A stretch of 64,000 nucleotides of DNA from the IMG/VR virus record IMGVR_UViG_3300022200_000019, positions 124,001-188,000 of that record, one strand, 5' to 3'. Position 1 is the stretch's first letter, and every line of letters starts with the position of its first letter. Shown one piece after another: positions 7,003-42,453 of the stretch. The notes below the pieces were generated by a model. The model saw nothing but the letters and a program-made list of their open reading frames with translations, was not told the DNA's origin and ran no database searches. A program made the position numbers and the translations under genes.

Positions 7003-7169
7003 AACTAATGATAGCATACATTGCGTACTACTTAGGACATTGGATTAGTTTTCCGATGTATTGGTTTGATTGGGGCTGGCTATATCCAGCATACAATCGA
7101 CTAATGATTTGGAGCGCAGAACTTGACGACGAAGGAGTGATTTGGAGTGCACCAGATCGTAAGAGTTGA
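6987..7169 (+). CDS. Small membrane protein
   Basis: 60 aa, Trp-rich hydrophobic segment. Confidence 0.5.
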   Translation: MDKEMKLMIAYIAYYLGHWISFPMYWFDWGWLYPAYNRLMIWSAELDDEGVIWSAPDRKS

Positions 7170-7767
7170 ACCGGCTATTCCAGCATTCAATATTACTTGG
7201 AAAATTACTTCCAAGTGTAATTATGACTGCATGTATTGTCGTATAGAGGATCATAATCCAACTGCACAACATAAGTCTTTAAAAGAATTACAAGATATAT
7301 GGATGTCAATAATTAGTAAAAGCGCACATTTGAACCTTCCGTATAAAGTTGGAATTAGCGGCGGTGAGCCAGTATCAAACAAGGATTTTCTTCCGTTTAT
7401 CCAGTGGTTAAAGAATAGGCCAGAAAAAATATTTTTGTATTTGACTACCAATGGTAGTGCTAGTTTAGCATATTACAAACGTGTCGCTGAGATTGTTGAC
7501 GGATTATCGTTTAGTTTACATTCTGAACATGTACACGAAAGTAAATTCTTTAATACTGCACGAGAATTAGATAAACTTATGATACGTCCAGAAAAAAGTT
7601 TTCATGTAAATATCATGGATGAGTTTTGGAATCAAGACAGAATACCTATATATGAAGACTACCTTAAAAAATATGATATATCGTATAGTGTGAATTCTAT
7701 TAATTATACTCATAAAACTCGAAACAAACCTATATTACAAGGAAACAATGACCTTAGAAAATCATAA
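7147..7767 (+). CDS. Radical SAM protein (core only)
   Basis: CNYDCMYC (CxxxCxxC), ISGGEP, LTTNGS, SFSLH. Confidence 0.9.
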   Translation: MHQIVRVEPAIPAFNITWKITSKCNYDCMYCRIEDHNPTAQHKSLKELQDIWMSIISKSAHLNLPYKVGISGGEPVSNKDFLPFIQWLKNRPEKIFLYLTTNGSASLAYYKRVAEIVDGLSFSLHSEHVHESKFFNTARELDKLMIRPEKSFHVNIMDEFWNQDRIPIYEDYLKKYDISYSVNSINYTHKTRNKPILQGNNDLRKS

Positions 7768-8624: not shown

Positions 8625-8993
8625 ATGAGCTGTAACAATGGAAAGGCATGCTCCACCAAATGGTGTGGGTGGCTACAGAGCCTAGCACAAATCGCTGTAG
8701 CTGGAGTTATCGTTTACGCTGGATTCATCGTAAATCAACACATGGAATCGTGGACTCGTGCTTTTGATCAGGGCAGCAAAGATTTACACAATATCAGTCG
8801 AGCAATGACCGAAATTGAAACTGACATGCGTATTATTAAAGTACAAATGGACGGTATGAATATCAATACTGCTGGATTAAATCAAAACTTTGCGCACTTA
8901 AATCGTCAGATGGATGCGATGAATTATCAAGTTGGCAGCATTCGTAATCGTTTCTCTCCAATGGGCATGATGCGTGGAATGATGCCATGGTAG
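8625..8993 (+). CDS. Single-TM coiled-coil protein
   Basis: TM helix then Met-rich heptads ending MGMMRGMMPW; TAAATA 4 nt upstream. Confidence 0.75.
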   Translation: MSCNNGKACSTKWCGWLQSLAQIAVAGVIVYAGFIVNQHMESWTRAFDQGSKDLHNISRAMTEIETDMRIIKVQMDGMNINTAGLNQNFAHLNRQMDAMNYQVGSIRNRFSPMGMMRGMMPW

Positions 8994-9163
8994 TATGTAA
9001 ATGTAGGGATATTAGAGAAGAAGATTACCCTACAGAAGCAGAACTAAAAGAACGCATCATGAAACCCGATTTTAATTGTGGGCAATGTCAGATGCGTTAT
9101 TTGATGGTTGACGAACAACCTAACACCCAGTATAATACAAAAACTCAGAGTACAGCCACTTAA
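8987..9163 (+). CDS. Bfd-like [2Fe-2S] ferredoxin (58 aa)
   Basis: MVVCKCRDIREEDYPTEAELKERIMKPDFNCGQC...: CxC...CGxC; below track length cutoff. Confidence 0.6.
   Translation: MVVCKCRDIREEDYPTEAELKERIMKPDFNCGQCQMRYLMVDEQPNTQYNTKTQSTAT
9108..9136 (+). promoter_or_regulatory. Sigma70-type promoter for ncRNA/tRNA transcript
   Basis: TTGACG-17 bp-TATAAT. Confidence 0.8.
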
Positions 9164-9272
9164 TACATATATGCGGACACTATGTCGACTACTGCTTCCG
9201 CGGGTCAGGTTACGGTTCGAAACGTTTACCGTTGTACTTTAAGTGTCCTGGGCATGACAATAATCTGCCCAT
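9145..9272 (+). ncRNA. Candidate structured (pseudoknotted) ncRNA upstream of tRNA-Trp
   Basis: Pairings 9147-56/9231-40, 9175-81/9242-48, 9249-54/9266-71; family not identified. Confidence 0.45.
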
Positions 9273-9280
9273 ATTATTTT

Positions 9281-9354
9281 GTAGGGATGGTATAATGGCA
9301 TTACGCTGGTCTCCAAAACCAGAGATTGAGGTTCGATCCCTTGTCCCTGCGCCA
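9281..9354 (+). tRNA. tRNA-Trp (CCA)
   Basis: Acceptor GTAGGGA/TCCCTGC, anticodon arm CTGGT-CTCCAAA-ACCAG, T-loop TTCGATC, encoded 3' CCA. Confidence 0.95.
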
Positions 9355-9391: not shown

Positions 9392-9496
9392 ATGAATATG
9401 GTTTGTGCTGTTTTGGACAGCGTAATTTTAGTACTTACTGTAATCACAATGTTTGCTGTTTTAAGAGGGTGGAAAAATGAAAAAGAAGCGCACTAA
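9392..9496 (+). CDS. 34-aa membrane peptide
   Basis: SD GAGGTG, TAAATA at 9363; MNMVCAVLDSVILVLTVITMFAVLRGW... Confidence 0.45.
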   Translation: MNMVCAVLDSVILVLTVITMFAVLRGWKNEKEAH

Positions 9497-9599
9497 AAAT
9501 CCAGTTGCTCGGTTTATGAATGATTTCAACAAGCCTGCAACACACCGAGACCGAACAAAATACTCGCGCAAAGCAAAACACACAAAACCTCTGTTGTAA
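9477..9599 (+). CDS. 40-aa basic protein, possibly ArfA-like
   Basis: MKKKRTKNPVARFMNDFNKPATHRDRTKYSRKAKHTKPLL; not in track. Confidence 0.55.
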   Translation: MKKKRTKNPVARFMNDFNKPATHRDRTKYSRKAKHTKPLL

Positions 9600-9619
9600 T
9601 ATTTTTATTTGTTTATATT

Positions 9620-10618
9620 ATGAGCAATATCTTTTTTGTTCCGTATCATAATAGCGGCGGACATTTTTTAACATGGTCAATGTATTATTTGTGTGGGTAC
9701 GACGAATATTTTTCAAAAGATGAAGACAAATATATATCTTTGCCAGAAATTGATAATACAATTACCCAGACTCGAAAAAATTTCCATATTTTTAAACCAA
9801 CAAAATCAAGAGGTTATAACGACACGTTAAACAAAATTGGAAAGGCGGAGTTTATCTATGCATCGGTAATTAGTGATGAGCTTGCAGCAAAACATCTTAA
9901 TATTGATCTTAACTATCAAGACGATAACCATAAAAAGCAACTAGAAGAATTTAATGCCGAAGATTCTATAAAACTTTTTAATATTTCAAAAGATTACCCG
10001 CTAGTATTTATTGATTATTGTGATTACGATTATCGCAATCAGTTTTATAATAATAGAAATCCACTATCACGATCATCTAAGAGTTATGATTCATTTGAGG
10101 ACGAACTTAAAGAGGTGGAATTGTTTTATTCATCTAAAACTGGTAATTATTTTGATGAAAATATTTGGGATCGTAGAGAAAAATTAGCATTAATGCTTAA
10201 CTACTTATATAAGAAATTTGACTATTATAAACATTTTGATAAAACTCTTCCTCATCTATACTATAATACAGATGATATCTGGAACGGGCTTGATTCAATT
10301 GTATACGAAATAGCAGAATTCTTTAATCAAAAAATTGATTATGATAGATTTACATCCTGGAAAATAATTTATTCGCGTTGGCGAGAGAATCATAAACAAT
10401 ATTTCTCTAGACATTTAAATAGAATTACACGTGCTATCGTTAATAACGAATATCTATCATTAAAACGTTTCGAAATGGATTTTTATAAAGAATGTTTAAT
10501 TCAAAGTTCATTAATTTATGATTACAATTTAAATTTAAAAACATGGGGTTTGGAAAAATTTCCAGAAAATACTCGGGATTTACACTCATTGCTTGAGCCA
10601 AATATACATGTGATTTAA
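9620..10618 (+). CDS. AT-rich hypothetical protein, possibly sulfotransferase-like
   Basis: 332 aa; N-terminal FFVPYHNSGGHFLTW loop; fold call is weak. Confidence 0.6.
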   Translation: MSNIFFVPYHNSGGHFLTWSMYYLCGYDEYFSKDEDKYISLPEIDNTITQTRKNFHIFKPTKSRGYNDTLNKIGKAEFIYASVISDELAAKHLNIDLNYQDDNHKKQLEEFNAEDSIKLFNISKDYPLVFIDYCDYDYRNQFYNNRNPLSRSSKSYDSFEDELKEVELFYSSKTGNYFDENIWDRREKLALMLNYLYKKFDYYKHFDKTLPHLYYNTDDIWNGLDSIVYEIAEFFNQKIDYDRFTSWKIIYSRWRENHKQYFSRHLNRITRAIVNNEYLSLKRFEMDFYKECLIQSSLIYDYNLNLKTWGLEKFPENTRDLHSLLEPNIHVI

Positions 10619-39836: not shown

Positions 39837-40190
39837 ATGTTAAAATTAGTCAAAACGCCAAAGAAAAAGAAGCCAACAGATTGTACATTTGAAAAGCCAG
39901 TTGACAATCAAAAAACAGCAGTTAAAATGTTAATGTGCTGTAACAGTAATAACAGAGAATATGTAATTGGCCCAGATGTAGGTTTAGATTTAAATGTATT
40001 GGTAACAAAAACAAAACCAAATTATTATTTCAATCCGGCTATAGTTGATAATGGTGTGCAATATCAAGATTACTTAGGTAACACAATGCACACAGATACA
40101 ATAACAGAAGCAATGCAAGAAGCATTAACAAGACTTGCAGGAACTAGAAGAACCAGGAAAAAAACGGATGCAAATCAATCCAGAAATTGA
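39837..40190 (+). CDS. Degenerate peptide deformylase-like protein
   Basis: VIGPDVGLDLNVLV...FNPAIV echoes PDF motif I; HExxH absent. Confidence 0.4.
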   Translation: MLKLVKTPKKKKPTDCTFEKPVDNQKTAVKMLMCCNSNNREYVIGPDVGLDLNVLVTKTKPNYYFNPAIVDNGVQYQDYLGNTMHTDTITEAMQEALTRLAGTRRTRKKTDANQSRN

Positions 40191-42453
40191 ACAAATCACA
40201 GATTATGCAATTACTATTGCAAAGAAAAAAGAACATCATTACGTGTTAATCGAACATTTATTGCTTAGTTTAATACGCTTTGAACCATTTAATAACGTAC
40301 TAGTAAAGTATGGTGTTGAAGTTGATTTATTAGATCAAGAACTAGACTACTATCTTGACAGTTTAGTAAATCTTACAAACAAAGACTACGATGGACATCC
40401 AAAACGCACAAATGGTCTAGAGCGTGTGTTTAACCGTGCCGGTACACAAGTATTGTTTACAGGCCGTCGTTATATTACTACTGTTGATTTGTATCTTAGT
40501 ATTACTTCTGAAACCAACAGTCATGCACAATATTTTCTGTTAAAATACGGAGTCGAAAAAGAAGCATTTACTTCGTTCTGGAATGAAAATTACAAACAAG
40601 GCAAAGTTACTCTTAACGACGATCAAATTAAAGAAGTACTTGAGGAGCATTGCACTAACTTAAATGCACTTGCTCGTGAAGGAGATCTAGAACCGCTTAT
40701 TGGTCGTTCTGCAGAATTACAAGATGCAATTGAAATTCTTGCTAAAAAGTTCAAGTCTAATGTATTGATGATCGGCGATCCAGGTGTTGGTAAAACTGCT
40801 ATTGTAGAAGGGCTTGCACAAAAGATCGAAAATAGCGATGTACCAGAATTTCTTAAAGACCATGAAATCTGGAGTTTGGAAGTTGGTTCATTGCTTGCTG
40901 GATCTAAGTATCGCGGCGAGTTTGAAGAAAAATTTAAAGATGTTATTAAAGCACTAGAAGCAACCGATAATGCTATTTTGTTTATTGACGAAGCACACAC
41001 TATGCACGGTGCTGGTGCTGGATCAAATTCAAGTCTGGACATGGCCAACATGCTCAAGCCGGCAATCACCAAAGGAAAACTAAAAGTAATTGCTTCCACT
41101 ACCTGGGAAGAATACTACGAGACTTTTGAAAAAGATCGTGCCATGATGCGTCGATTCTATAATCTTTCAATCGATGAACCAGATCACGATACTACAATTA
41201 AGATTCTTCAAGGACTCAGCGAACGATTAGAAGAATATCACGATGTTGAAATTGATTCTGCTGCTATTACTACCGCAGTTGACTTAGGAACACGCTATAT
41301 TCACGATCGTAAGAATCCAGACAAGTCAATTGATTTGCTTGACGCTGCTTGTGCTAAACAACGTGCCAAAGATAACTCAGGTGTAATCATTACTGCCGAT
41401 TTAATTTACGCAGAAGCAAATAAATTAACCGGAATTCCTCAAGAACGCTTAAAAAATGAGGATTGTGATAAGGTTCGTAACCTTGAATCACGTGTTAAGG
41501 AACGATTATACGGACAAGACGAAGTCGTTGATACCGTACTGAAGCGTATTAACGTTTCATTTGCTGGACTTAATTCTGATAATAAACCTGTTGCTAGTTT
41601 CTTGTTCTTGGGCCCAACTGGCACAGGTAAAACTGAACTTGCTAAACTGCTAAGTGAAAACTTGGATATGGAATTGTTACGTTATGATATGAGTGAGTAT
41701 CAAGAAAAACACACAGTATCAACACTTATTGGCGCACCACCGGGTTATGTTGGGTATGAAGATTCTAACTTAGGCGGCGGTAAGTTAATTAACGATTTGT
41801 CTAAAGATCCTTTTAGTATTATTTTGTTTGACGAAATTGAAAAAGCGCATCCAGATGTAAGCAATGTGTTGTTATCAATGCTCGACGAAGGTAAAATTAC
41901 ATCAAGTTCGGGCAAAACCGTAAACTGCACTAATGCTATTATTATTCTTACATCTAACTTAGGTGCTCGTGATAATGAAAACAATAATATCGGTTTTGGC
42001 ACTGATCTAGAGCGCACTGGTTCTGAAGATAAAGCACTCAAAGAATACTTTAAACCAGAACTACGTAATCGCTTAGATGCTATTGTTAAATTTAACAAAC
42101 TAGATACACTAAGTATTAAGAAGATTGTTAATAAATTCTTAAATCAACTCAAAAAGAATTTGTCTAAGAAAGGTATCGCAATTAATGTCACCGAGCCAGT
42201 TGTTGAATATCTAGCAGAAGTTGGATATGACAAGAAGATGGGCGCACGTCCGCTGGCACGTAAAATTGACGAACTATTAAAAGTTCCGCTAAGTGAAAAA
42301 ATTCTGTTTGAAAATTTGCGTGATACTGACATTAACATTCGTTTAACCACAGAAAATACCATAGAATTTGTAAATAAAAATAGCGGCGGTCAAGAAGCTT
42401 CTGTGAACAAAGATGGACTCATTGTACTGGACCAATTCAAACCTAAAGCATAA
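40168..42453 (+). CDS. ClpA/ClpB-family AAA+ unfoldase
   Basis: Clp N-domain, GDPGVGKT, FIDE, GPTGTGKT, LFDEIEKAHP, IGF loop, MGARPL; ATG 40168. Confidence 0.95.
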   Translation: MQINPEIEQITDYAITIAKKKEHHYVLIEHLLLSLIRFEPFNNVLVKYGVEVDLLDQELDYYLDSLVNLTNKDYDGHPKRTNGLERVFNRAGTQVLFTGRRYITTVDLYLSITSETNSHAQYFLLKYGVEKEAFTSFWNENYKQGKVTLNDDQIKEVLEEHCTNLNALAREGDLEPLIGRSAELQDAIEILAKKFKSNVLMIGDPGVGKTAIVEGLAQKIENSDVPEFLKDHEIWSLEVGSLLAGSKYRGEFEEKFKDVIKALEATDNAILFIDEAHTMHGAGAGSNSSLDMANMLKPAITKGKLKVIASTTWEEYYETFEKDRAMMRRFYNLSIDEPDHDTTIKILQGLSERLEEYHDVEIDSAAITTAVDLGTRYIHDRKNPDKSIDLLDAACAKQRAKDNSGVIITADLIYAEANKLTGIPQERLKNEDCDKVRNLESRVKERLYGQDEVVDTVLKRINVSFAGLNSDNKPVASFLFLGPTGTGKTELAKLLSENLDMELLRYDMSEYQEKHTVSTLIGAPPGYVGYEDSNLGGGKLINDLSKDPFSIILFDEIEKAHPDVSNVLLSMLDEGKITSSSGKTVNCTNAIIILTSNLGARDNENNNIGFGTDLERTGSEDKALKEYFKPELRNRLDAIVKFNKLDTLSIKKIVNKFLNQLKKNLSKKGIAINVTEPVVEYLAEVGYDKKMGARPLARKIDELLKVPLSEKILFENLRDTDINIRLTTENTIEFVNKNSGGQEASVNKDGLIVLDQFKPKA

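What the first reader, a model, noticed from the sequence alone, without database searches (positions are those of the whole stretch)
9131..9280. Candidate pseudoknotted ncRNA between a sigma70 promoter and tRNA-Trp
Seen: after TATAAT (9131), AGAGTACAGC (9147-56) pairs with GTTGTACTTT (9231-40; 10 bp, 2 G-U) and GGACACT (9175-81) pairs with AGTGTCC (9242-48); these two helices cross. There is an internal ACG-GTTCGAAA-CGT stem with a T-loop-like loop. At the 3' end TGGGCA/TGCCCA (9249-71) could form an H-type pseudoknot with TGTC/GACA. Inference: a stable phage RNA co-transcribed with the tRNA, of a family I cannot name. The 5' helix overlaps the end of the Bfd-like ORF.
Basis: partly seen in the sequence, partly recalled or inferred. 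Interest (0 to 1): 0.6.

Follow-up and report, generated by a model that had tools for sequence, protein, structure and literature searches.

The report
Conserved phage leader RNA before tRNA-Trp

Summary
The sequence features are at the stated coordinates. The promoter (TTGACG-N17-TATAAT, 9108-9136) belongs to a real class: 29 near-consensus sites on the coding strand of the 213-kb phage record against about 6 expected.

Segment 9143-9271 is non-coding. Relatives tolerate 1-nt indels, and the ATG of the overlapping ORF is lost. It matches no Rfam family.

I found six further variants in related metagenomic phages. They differ by about 6% (median), against about 25% at third codon positions of the flanking gene. 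The element occurs with tRNA-Trp next to it, 100-145 nt away, or absent, so it is a module of its own. More distant relatives carry an abiF-motif-like hairpin in the same slot.

The best fold is nested. A 13-14-bp terminal helix starts at the predicted transcription start. It encloses three hairpins, the last with a T-loop-like loop, and a fifth hairpin follows. The crossing helix competes with this fold and is split by a 63-nt hairpin insertion in one variant.

No compensatory changes exist, so no structure is proven, and no RNA data exist.

Most likely it is a T4 RNAC-like small stable RNA released by RNase P. A cis-acting 5' leader is the main rival.

The parts
9108..9136 (+). Sigma-70-type promoter: TTGACG (9108-13), 17-nt spacer, TATAAT (9131-36). 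The predicted start is A9143.
   Evidence: 11 of 12 matches. The -35 box is the perfect TTGACA in five of the six other variants, and the -10 box never varies. The promoter class is enriched: 29 on the + strand against about 6 expected.
9143..9156 (+). P1, 5' strand of the terminal helix. It begins at the predicted first transcribed base.
   Evidence: C9146->U gives a U-A9241 pair in 5 variants. G9148->A turns G-U into A-U in L118.
9157..9175 (+). A/U-rich single-stranded joining region.
   Evidence: Unpaired in the minimum-energy fold. It holds a 1-nt insertion after 9164 and C9166->A in relatives.
9176..9186 (+). P2, a small hairpin (GACA-CUA-UGUC) with a variable loop.
   Evidence: The loop is an indel hot spot at 9180-86. 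In L118 the hairpin is kept in a shifted register, CGGA/UCCG.
9187..9206 (+). P3 hairpin: GAC-UA-CUGC, loop UUCC, GCGG-GUC. The bulge at 9190-91 varies.
   Evidence: The bulge is U, A or deleted among variants. The upper stem never varies.
9208..9230 (+). P4 hairpin with the T-loop-like loop GUUCGAAA. It abuts the 3' strand of P1.
   Evidence: Loop and inner stem never vary. UU->AG at 9226-27 (L016, L119) adds a U-A pair. U9225->C (L113) breaks one pair.
9231..9244 (+). P1, 3' strand of the terminal helix.
   Evidence: U9232->A (L113, L109) and G9234->A (L109) break two inner pairs. The outer 10 bp are kept in all variants.
9245..9248 (+). Linker GUCC. The 63-nt hairpin insertion of variant L016 lies right after 9244.
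9249..9271 (+). P5 hairpin: UGGGCA-U-GA, loop CAAUAA, UC-UGCCCA.
   Evidence: It is nearly invariant. C9270->U keeps a G-U pair, and U9264->C breaks the loop-closing pair.
9272..9280 (+). U-rich spacer before the tRNA.
   Evidence: The U-run is not kept in L113, L109, L118 or L119, so a conserved intrinsic terminator is unlikely.
9281..9354 (+). tRNA-Trp (CCA). It is the only tRNA gene in the 213-kb record. Its RNase P site would set the 3' end of the upstream RNA.
9392..9496 (+). Optional 34-aa hydrophobic small ORF of the same transcription unit.
   Evidence: It is absent in L109, and some contigs skip it (joint 9388->9474).
9477..9599 (+). 40-aa basic ORF of the DUF7230 family, the usual downstream gene of the unit.
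   Evidence: Pfam PF23876, E = 1.6e-14. Its homologues led to the related loci.
8987..9163 (+). Its 3' end holds the promoter and overlaps P1.
   Evidence: No Pfam hit. The ORF ends at 9146-48 in relatives.

Best explanation
Segment 9143-9271 (to 9280) is a non-coding RNA module at the very 5' end of a transcript made by the host RNA polymerase from the promoter at 9108-9136. The same transcript continues into tRNA-Trp and two small ORFs.

The module most likely folds as a closed four-way junction. Terminal helix P1 (9143-56 with 9231-44) encloses hairpins P2, P3 and P4, and P4 has a T-loop-like loop stacked on P1. Hairpin P5 (9249-71) follows.

Inferred steps:
- RNase P cuts at the 5' end of the tRNA (9280/9281) and frees an RNA of about 138 nt.
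- The 5' end of that RNA is buried in P1 and its 3' end is guarded by P5, so it accumulates as a small stable RNA.
- It then acts in trans, as T4 RNAC from the T4 tRNA cluster is thought to.

Its slot is filled in relatives by other stable RNAs (an abiF-antitoxin-like hairpin, a tRNA). A decoy or mimic aimed at a host RNA-binding factor is therefore the likeliest kind of action.

Shown: the promoter class, the non-coding nature, the conservation and the modularity. Inferred: the fold, the processing, the stability and the trans action.
For: - Promoter: 11 of 12 matches. The class is about five-fold enriched on the coding strand. The -35 box is the perfect TTGACA in relatives.
- Non-coding: 1-nt indels at 9164, 9182 and 9190, and loss of ATG 9182, in relatives.
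- Constraint: median pairwise divergence is about 0.06, against about 0.25 at third codon positions of the neighbouring 122-aa gene.
- A module of its own: it is found with tRNA-Trp 9 nt away (window, L120), 100-145 nt away (L119, L118), or without any tRNA (L109), and with varied downstream genes.
- Fold: P1 starts at the predicted start site. The P1-closed fold is the minimum-energy fold in 6 of 7 variants. Two one-sided changes improve P1 (C9146U, G9148A).
- Indels and the 63-nt insertion fall in predicted loops, a bulge or a linker.
- L118 changes 4 of 6 bases at 9184-89, yet keeps P2 and P3 in a shifted register.
- T4 rnaC has the same layout: a terminal helix, internal hairpins, and a T-arm next to the 3' strand. 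It is a small RNA transcribed from a tRNA region (PMC3014915, PMC9697503).
Against: - No RNA data. No sequencing run on record as RNA holds the locus.
- No compensatory base-pair change in 7 variants.
- Five sites in predicted pairs are broken in some variant (9183, 9225, 9232, 9234, 9264). Variable sites are not enriched in unpaired positions (11 of 21 are paired, P = 0.35).
- The z-score is only -2.2.
- The T-like hairpin is not a canonical T-arm: 3-bp inner stem and 8-nt loop.
- Mosaic exchange between variants (window against L016, L120 against L119) weakens the selection argument.
- The element is always the first thing after the promoter, which fits a cis-acting leader equally well.
- Without a nearby tRNA (L109) there is no obvious way to form the 3' end.
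Confidence: 0.4

Rival explanations
1. It is a cis-acting 5' leader. The structured 5' end stays attached, or acts before cleavage. It protects the tRNA-Trp / small-ORF transcript from 5'-end-dependent decay, or it guides processing. It has no role in trans.
For: In all 7 variants the element lies directly after the promoter, and P1 begins at the predicted first base. No conserved terminator separates it from what follows. The unit ends with the DUF7230 ORF and its terminator hairpin in most relatives.
Against: The distance and the identity of downstream modules vary freely: tRNA at 9 to 145 nt or absent, DUF7230 or a methyltransferase. A four-way junction plus an extra hairpin is far more than a 5' protective stem needs. 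The other occupants of this slot are stable RNAs in their own right.
Confidence: 0.27
2. There is no RNA function. The segment is a promoter plus spacer. Its similarity among phages reflects recent exchange of a cassette, or a DNA-level role, and the helices are chance.
For: Helices of this kind are expected by chance. There is no covariation. The history is clearly mosaic. The element is confined to one narrow clade.
Against: Divergence is 3-10 times below third-codon divergence in most of the 21 pairs. Long invariant runs (9191-9224 and 9235-9263) sit between indel hot spots. The element is present in estuary and marine-sediment metagenomes from separate studies.
Confidence: 0.15
3. One reading: a pseudoknotted RNA in which helix 9147-56/9231-40 and helix 9175-81/9242-48 form together, with a second pseudoknot at the 3' hairpin.
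For: Both helices can pair in every variant without the insertion. Two C->U changes (9180, 9248) keep G-U pairs. In L109 a helix-2-closed fold is 1.4 kcal/mol better than the P1-closed fold.
Against: Helix 2 shares AGU 9242-44 with the outer part of P1, and GAC 9176-78 with hairpin P2. L016 has 63 nt inserted inside its 3' strand. Folds that force helix 2 are 3-12 kcal/mol worse in 6 of 7 variants. Only one base (A9241) links the two 3' strands. The TGTC partner of the second pseudoknot varies while GACA does not.
Confidence: 0.07
4. It is a decayed tRNA gene or tRNA-like remnant left from a former tRNA array.
For: It has a GGTTCGAAA string and lies next to a tRNA gene. Other relatives carry tRNA arrays or a permuted tmRNA near the homologous genes.
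Against: The tRNA covariance model gives no match even at E <= 10. ARAGORN finds nothing credible even with relaxed settings. The T-like stem cannot form the canonical 5-bp stem with a 7-nt loop. The sequence is conserved rather than decaying.
Confidence: 0.04

Closest known systems
Phage T4 RNAC (species 1 RNA, rnaC) and RNAD, small RNAs of the T4 tRNA gene cluster
   Same: Phage-encoded and about 120-140 nt, lying beside a tRNA gene on the same strand. T4 rnaC folds into a terminal helix that encloses hairpins, with a T-loop hairpin directly before the 3' strand of that helix. This is the layout predicted here. The functions of the T4 RNAs are still unknown (PMC3014915, PMC9697503).
   Different: There is no sequence or model similarity: model R1 finds nothing in the T4 tRNA region. 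T4 rnaC has a canonical T-arm (5 bp, 7-nt GGUUCGAAUCC loop), whereas here the inner stem is 3 bp with an 8-nt loop. T4 RNAC lies downstream of the tRNAs, whereas this element is the first module after the promoter. Its accumulation as a stable RNA is not shown here.
abiF motif RNA (Rfam RF03085), RNA antitoxin of AbiF abortive-infection systems
   Same: A hairpin resembling this motif occupies the same slot, right after the equivalent promoter, in more distant relatives of this phage. This suggests the slot holds small trans-acting RNAs. The motif is an RNA antitoxin (PMC12373285).
   Different: The element itself does not match RF03085, and the window's genome has no match. The relatives' hits are below the family threshold (29.3 against 37 bits). 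No Abi_2 gene is present in the 213 kb.
Bacterial Y-RNA-like tRNA mimics (YrlA)
   Same: A long stem formed by the two RNA ends, plus a domain with a T-loop-like hairpin. This resemblance is recalled from general knowledge.
   Different: No Rfam match of any kind at E <= 10. No Ro/TROVE protein gene in the 213-kb record.
Structured 5' leaders that stabilise bacterial and phage transcripts
   Same: A helix that starts at the first transcribed base, with no single-stranded 5' tail. This is the feature known to block 5'-end-dependent decay (established knowledge).
   Different: Known stabilisers are simple hairpins. This is a multi-branched domain of about 100 nt plus a further hairpin, and it is conserved over its whole length.

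Membership tests
tRNA (RF00005) | Cloverleaf that scores with the tRNA covariance model or ARAGORN | tested here: not met
   No match for 9137-9280 at E <= 10. ARAGORN with relaxed settings gives only implausible intron-containing calls on the other strand.
tmRNA, standard or permuted | tRNA-like domain plus a tag reading frame, detected by ARAGORN or Rfam | tested here: not met
   ARAGORN in tmRNA mode finds none. Rfam finds none.
   cmscan of 4227 families found only the tRNA at the gathering score. Nothing in 9137-9280 reached E <= 10 in the window or in the longer L016 variant.
T4 RNAC-type stable RNA of tRNA clusters | Phage RNA gene beside tRNA genes on the same strand, without a terminator between | tested here: met
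   The element ends 9 nt before tRNA-Trp. The U-run after P5 is not conserved.
T4 RNAC-type stable RNA of tRNA clusters | Terminal helix with a canonical T-arm next to its 3' strand | tested here: inconclusive
   The layout is the same as the T4 rnaC fold. Here, however, the T-like hairpin has a 3-bp inner stem and an 8-nt loop.
T4 RNAC-type stable RNA of tRNA clusters | Sequence or structure homology to T4 rnaC/rnaD | tested here: not met
   Model R1 gives no match above noise in the T4 tRNA region.
T4 RNAC-type stable RNA of tRNA clusters | Accumulates as a discrete stable RNA in infected cells | not testable with these tools
   No run on record as RNA holds the locus.
H-type pseudoknot | Two crossing helices that are both maintained in evolution | tested here: inconclusive
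   There are no compensatory changes for either helix. Helix 2 is split by an insertion in L016 and is energetically disfavoured in 6 of 7 variants.
Terminator-based riboswitch or attenuator | Aptamer followed by a conserved hairpin with a U-run | tested here: not met
   The hairpin 9249-71 is conserved, but the U-run is replaced by AUAACAAAAAU (L113) or UAUAUUAAAUAC (L109, L118).
abiF motif RNA (RF03085) | A match to the motif model | tested here: not met
   No match in the window's genome at E <= 10. Sub-threshold matches occur only in relatives that lack the element.
Y-RNA-like (YrlA) with a Ro partner | An Rfam match and a TROVE/Ro gene in the genome | tested here: not met
   No Rfam match. 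No TROVE domain in the 213 kb. The record is about 61% complete, so absence is not final.

The most novel reading that the evidence does not exclude
The stretch between the Cys-rich ORF and the DUF7230 gene is an early-expressed 'RNA counter-defence islet'. Interchangeable small RNA modules sit behind one strong promoter: an abiF-antitoxin-like hairpin, GC-rich hairpin units, tRNA-Trp, and this unknown four-way-junction RNA. Each would neutralise a different RNA-targeting host defence. On this reading the element is a new class of phage decoy or antitoxin-mimic RNA.
Probability: 0.15. Interest if true: 0.75.

Novelty: new member of a known kind. Interest (0 to 1): 0.4.

Why it matters
Small RNAs encoded beside phage tRNA genes have been known since T4 RNAC and RNAD, yet their roles are still unknown.

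This is a second, unrelated example, and it comes with natural experiments. There are variants with and without the tRNA, one with an inserted hairpin, and relatives that carry an antitoxin-like RNA in the same slot. If this island turns out to act against host defences, it would give a lead on what such RNAs are for.

As it stands, this is a well-delimited candidate for a new, narrowly distributed phage ncRNA family. Its structure is not proven and its function is unknown.

Tried and rejected
- Rfam at the gathering score and at E <= 10 on the window, on the longer L016 variant and on relatives gave nothing for the element.
- ARAGORN with relaxed, intron, tmRNA and mitochondrial settings gave nothing credible.
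- BLASTN against GenBank phages matched only the tRNA.
- Exact-pattern scans found nothing: 23-mer and 33-mer in IMG/VR, and a 27-mer in 185,579 species genomes.
- No second copy of the element or of the 63-nt insert exists in the genome.
- Eighty metagenome loci holding homologues of the downstream 332-aa gene had no homologue, by BLAST or by covariance model.
- Whole metagenome records could not be searched by handle.
- Model R1 found nothing in the T4 tRNA region.
- Covariation tests of the nested model and of the pseudoknot model had no power, with 0 compensatory pairs.
- No RNA sequencing run was found. Only DNA contigs could be laid on the locus (a first try failed). Two more diverged contig variants were seen there (X10 record 6, X9 record 25), but their sequences could not be retrieved.
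- The coding hypothesis was rejected because of frame-breaking indels and loss of the start codon.
- The terminator/riboswitch idea was rejected because the U-run is not conserved.
- The Y-RNA idea was rejected: no TROVE gene.
- An ArfA identity for DUF7230 got no support from sequence searches (PDB; Pfam). Only the gene layout resembles arfA.
- The literature search for DUF7230 returned nothing.

Full report
**Where the window lies.** The window is bases 124001-188000 of a 212,917-bp IMG/VR virus record. The record has 39% G+C and is estimated to be 61% complete, which implies a jumbo phage. Near-identical contigs come from freshwater and estuarine metagenomes. No close relative exists among GenBank phages. 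tRNA-Trp(CCA) at 9281-9354 is the only tRNA gene in the 213 kb.

- TATAAT (9131-36) has a partner TTGACG at 9108 with a 17-nt spacer, giving 11 of 12 matches.
- A scan of the genome finds 29 sites within one mismatch of TTGACA-N16-18-TATAAT on the coding strand and 7 on the other strand. Shuffles give about 12 for both strands together. The phage therefore uses consensus host-type promoters, and this one is credible.
- The helices alone are not remarkable. In random 144-nt windows of this genome a 10-bp helix occurs in 12%, a 7-bp Watson-Crick helix in 38%, and both crossing in about 1%.
- The minimum-energy fold of 9140-9280 has a z-score of -2.24 on the + strand and -1.24 on the - strand.

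**Known families.** Rfam gives only the tRNA at the gathering score, and nothing in 9137-9280 at E <= 10. This holds for the window and for a longer variant. ARAGORN finds no tRNA-like or tmRNA gene there.

**Finding relatives.**
- Phages whose homologue of the downstream 332-aa gene is 45% identical lack the whole cassette. In two of them (L021, L022) the Cys-rich ORF runs straight into that gene; in L020 and L023 that ORF was not called.
- Eighty further metagenome loci have no homologue of the element.
- Homologues were reached through the small DUF7230 gene and through the upstream 122-aa gene.
- Seven distinct versions are now known: window, L016, L113, L109, L120, L119 and L118 (alignment A7). 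Covariance-model scores are 146-172 bits.
- DNA contigs from estuary and marine-sediment runs also carry the element.

**What the variants show.**

1. The promoter is kept. The -35 box is the perfect TTGACA in five of the six other variants (L016 keeps TTGACG), and the -10 box never varies.
2. The segment is non-coding. There are 1-nt indels after 9164, at 9182 and at 9190. The ATG at 9182 of the overlapping 37-aa ORF is lost. C9146->T makes a stop codon that ends the upstream ORF at 9146-48.
3. The segment is constrained. Pairwise divergence is 2-10% (median about 6%), against 15-32% at third codon positions of the neighbouring 122-aa gene. Two pairs depart from this pattern (window against L016, L120 against L119). 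They show that variants have been exchanged between backgrounds, so the selection argument is good but not clean.
4. The element is a module of its own.
   - tRNA-Trp follows it after about 9 nt (window, L016, L120), 41 nt (L113), about 100 nt (L119) or about 145 nt (L118), or is absent (L109).
   - GC-rich hairpin units fill the gap where there is one.
   - The downstream gene is DUF7230 or a methyltransferase.
5. Variation clusters at 9164-66, 9180-86 and 9190-92. Runs 9191-9224 and 9235-9263 never change.

**Structure.** The window's minimum-energy fold has these parts:

| Part | Coordinates | Description |
|---|---|---|
| P1 | 9143-56 with 9231-44 | 13 bp with a C-A mismatch; begins at the base where a transcript from this promoter should start |
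| Joining region | 9157-75 | 19 nt, single-stranded, A/U-rich |
| P2 | 9176-86 | small hairpin |
| P3 | 9187-9206 | hairpin with a bulge |
| P4 | 9208-30 | hairpin with loop GUUCGAAA; abuts the 3' strand of P1 |
| Linker | 9245-48 | GUCC |
| P5 | 9249-71 | hairpin |

Evidence that fits this fold:
- C9146->U closes the mismatch, giving 14 bp in L120, L119 and L118.
- G9148->A turns a G-U pair into A-U.
- The bulge of P3 and the loop of P2 are the indel hot spots.
- UU->AG at 9226-27 adds a pair to P4.
- The 63-nt insertion of L016 is itself a hairpin with perfect 8-bp ends, placed exactly after P1.
- In L118, GTCGAC at 9184-89 has become TCCGGA, yet all six bases still pair in a shifted register, which keeps P2 and P3.

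Evidence against it:
- Two inner pairs of P1 break in L113 and L109.
- One pair of P4 and the loop-closing pairs of P2 and P5 break in single variants.
- No pair shows a change on both sides.
- Variable sites are not enriched in unpaired positions.

The fold is therefore plausible but unproven.

**The pseudoknot.**
- Helix 2 (9175-81 with 9242-48) uses AGU 9242-44, which also closes P1, and GAC 9176-78, which forms P2.
- L016 has the 63-nt insert inside its 3' strand.
- Folds forced to contain helix 2 are 3-12 kcal/mol worse than the P1-closed fold in six variants. Only in L109 is the helix-2 fold better, by 1.4 kcal/mol.
- The two changes within helix 2 are C->U transitions opposite G, which say little.
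- The TGTC partner of the proposed second pseudoknot varies, while GACA does not.
- I rate the pseudoknot as unlikely. A minor alternative conformer remains possible.

**Context.** In more distant relatives (L104, L115, L128, L129) an equivalent promoter sits at the same place in the 3' end of the Cys-rich ORF. It is followed by a 40-nt hairpin instead of the element. In three of them (L104, L115, L129) that hairpin matches the abiF motif (RF03085) at 29.3 bits, against a threshold of 37, with E = 0.013-0.052. The loop sequences are identical to the consensus and the stems differ. L128 carries the same hairpin with one base deleted and gives no match at E <= 1.

The abiF motif is the RNA antitoxin of AbiF systems (PMC12373285). 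The window's genome has neither the motif nor an Abi_2 gene. The slot is thus a place where different small structured RNAs are expressed early from a strong promoter.

**Comparison with what is known.** The nearest analogue is T4 RNAC. It is 139 nt, is encoded beside tRNA-Arg, and folds into a terminal helix with internal hairpins and a T-arm next to the 3' strand. The roles of RNAC and RNAD are still unknown (PMC3014915, PMC9697503). There is no homology: model R1 finds nothing in the T4 tRNA region. A Y-RNA-like reading fails for lack of an Rfam match and of a Ro gene. A terminator-type riboswitch fails because the U-run after P5 is not conserved.

**Verdict.** This is a real, conserved, promoter-proximal non-coding module of an undescribed and narrowly distributed family.

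| Reading | Probability |
|---|---|
| T4 RNAC-like small stable RNA, released by RNase P cleavage at the tRNA | 0.4 |
| Cis-acting 5' leader | 0.27 |
| No RNA function | 0.15 |
| Decayed tRNA or tRNA-like remnant | 0.04 |

Expression, the RNA ends, the structure and the function all remain to be shown.

Noticed in passing
L129:553-637; L115:342-381; L104:1350-1389; L128:~797-835: In relatives that lack the element, the equivalent promoter (seen in L129 and L128) is followed by a hairpin resembling the abiF antitoxin RNA motif. L104, L115 and L129 match RF03085 at 29.3 bits (threshold 37, E 0.013-0.052). L128 has the same hairpin with one base deleted and no Rfam match. No AbiF gene is nearby, so a phage-borne antitoxin mimic is possible.
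   Followed up: partly
L109:960-1010; L104, L113, L115 (alignment A6); window 9477-9599: In four relatives the small basic DUF7230 ORF has a terminator hairpin (GGCTC-N5-GAGCC plus T6-7) inside the reading frame, before the stop codon. The stem is kept and the loop varies. This recalls arfA, which is translated from non-stop mRNA, but no ArfA similarity was found by Pfam or PDB searches. The window's copy lacks the hairpin.
   Followed up: partly
L016:2563-2625 (inserted after window 9244): One otherwise near-identical contig carries a 63-nt insertion that folds into its own hairpin with perfect 8-bp ends (ATTCGAGT/ACTCGAAT). There is no other copy in the genome and no Rfam match.
   Followed up: yes
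L109:700-830; L118:2660-2790; L121:2655-2750: GC-rich hairpin units lie between the element and the tRNA in some variants. One unit shares 18 nt (GCCTCTGCGAACACATGC) with the abiF-like hairpin of other relatives. No Rfam match.
   Followed up: partly
window 9392-9496: A 34-aa hydrophobic small ORF between the tRNA and DUF7230 is optional. It is absent in L109, and some estuary contigs skip it (joint 9388->9474).
   Followed up: partly
whole record G000 (window 1-64000 and flanks): Near-consensus sigma-70 promoters (TTGACA-N16-18-TATAAT, at most 1 mismatch) number 29 on the coding strand against 7 on the other. About 12 are expected for both strands. This points to a host with canonical sigma-70 recognition.
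   Followed up: yes
L012 (G001:C1:33000-42541, reverse strand): A distant relative has a cluster of seven tRNA genes. One is a 93-nt tRNA with anticodon CTA, which ARAGORN labels 'Pyl'. It may be an amber suppressor.
   Followed up: no
L076:2020-2455: ARAGORN calls a permuted (two-piece) tmRNA with tag ANANRAPEMALAA directly upstream of a distant homologue of the 332-aa gene. Other homologues have tRNA genes nearby (L046, L074, L087).
   Followed up: no
window 9100-9140 and 9590-9625: The cassette (promoter -10 box, element, tRNA, two small ORFs; about 480 bp) is an insertion or deletion relative to phages whose flanking genes are otherwise about 80% identical. TTGTAA-like hexamers lie at both junctions.
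   Followed up: partly
window 40135-42453; 7147-7767: A ClpA-like ATPase of 772 aa (about 40% identical to those of several jumbo phages) and a radical-SAM protein are encoded in the window.
   Followed up: no
L121:3130-3215; L129:893-975; L128:1167-1250: Further downstream in relatives lies a second strong promoter, followed by a conserved leader (ATGAGCTAAGGGAAATAGGTCCCGC...ACAGGAGAAA) with no Rfam match.
   Followed up: no
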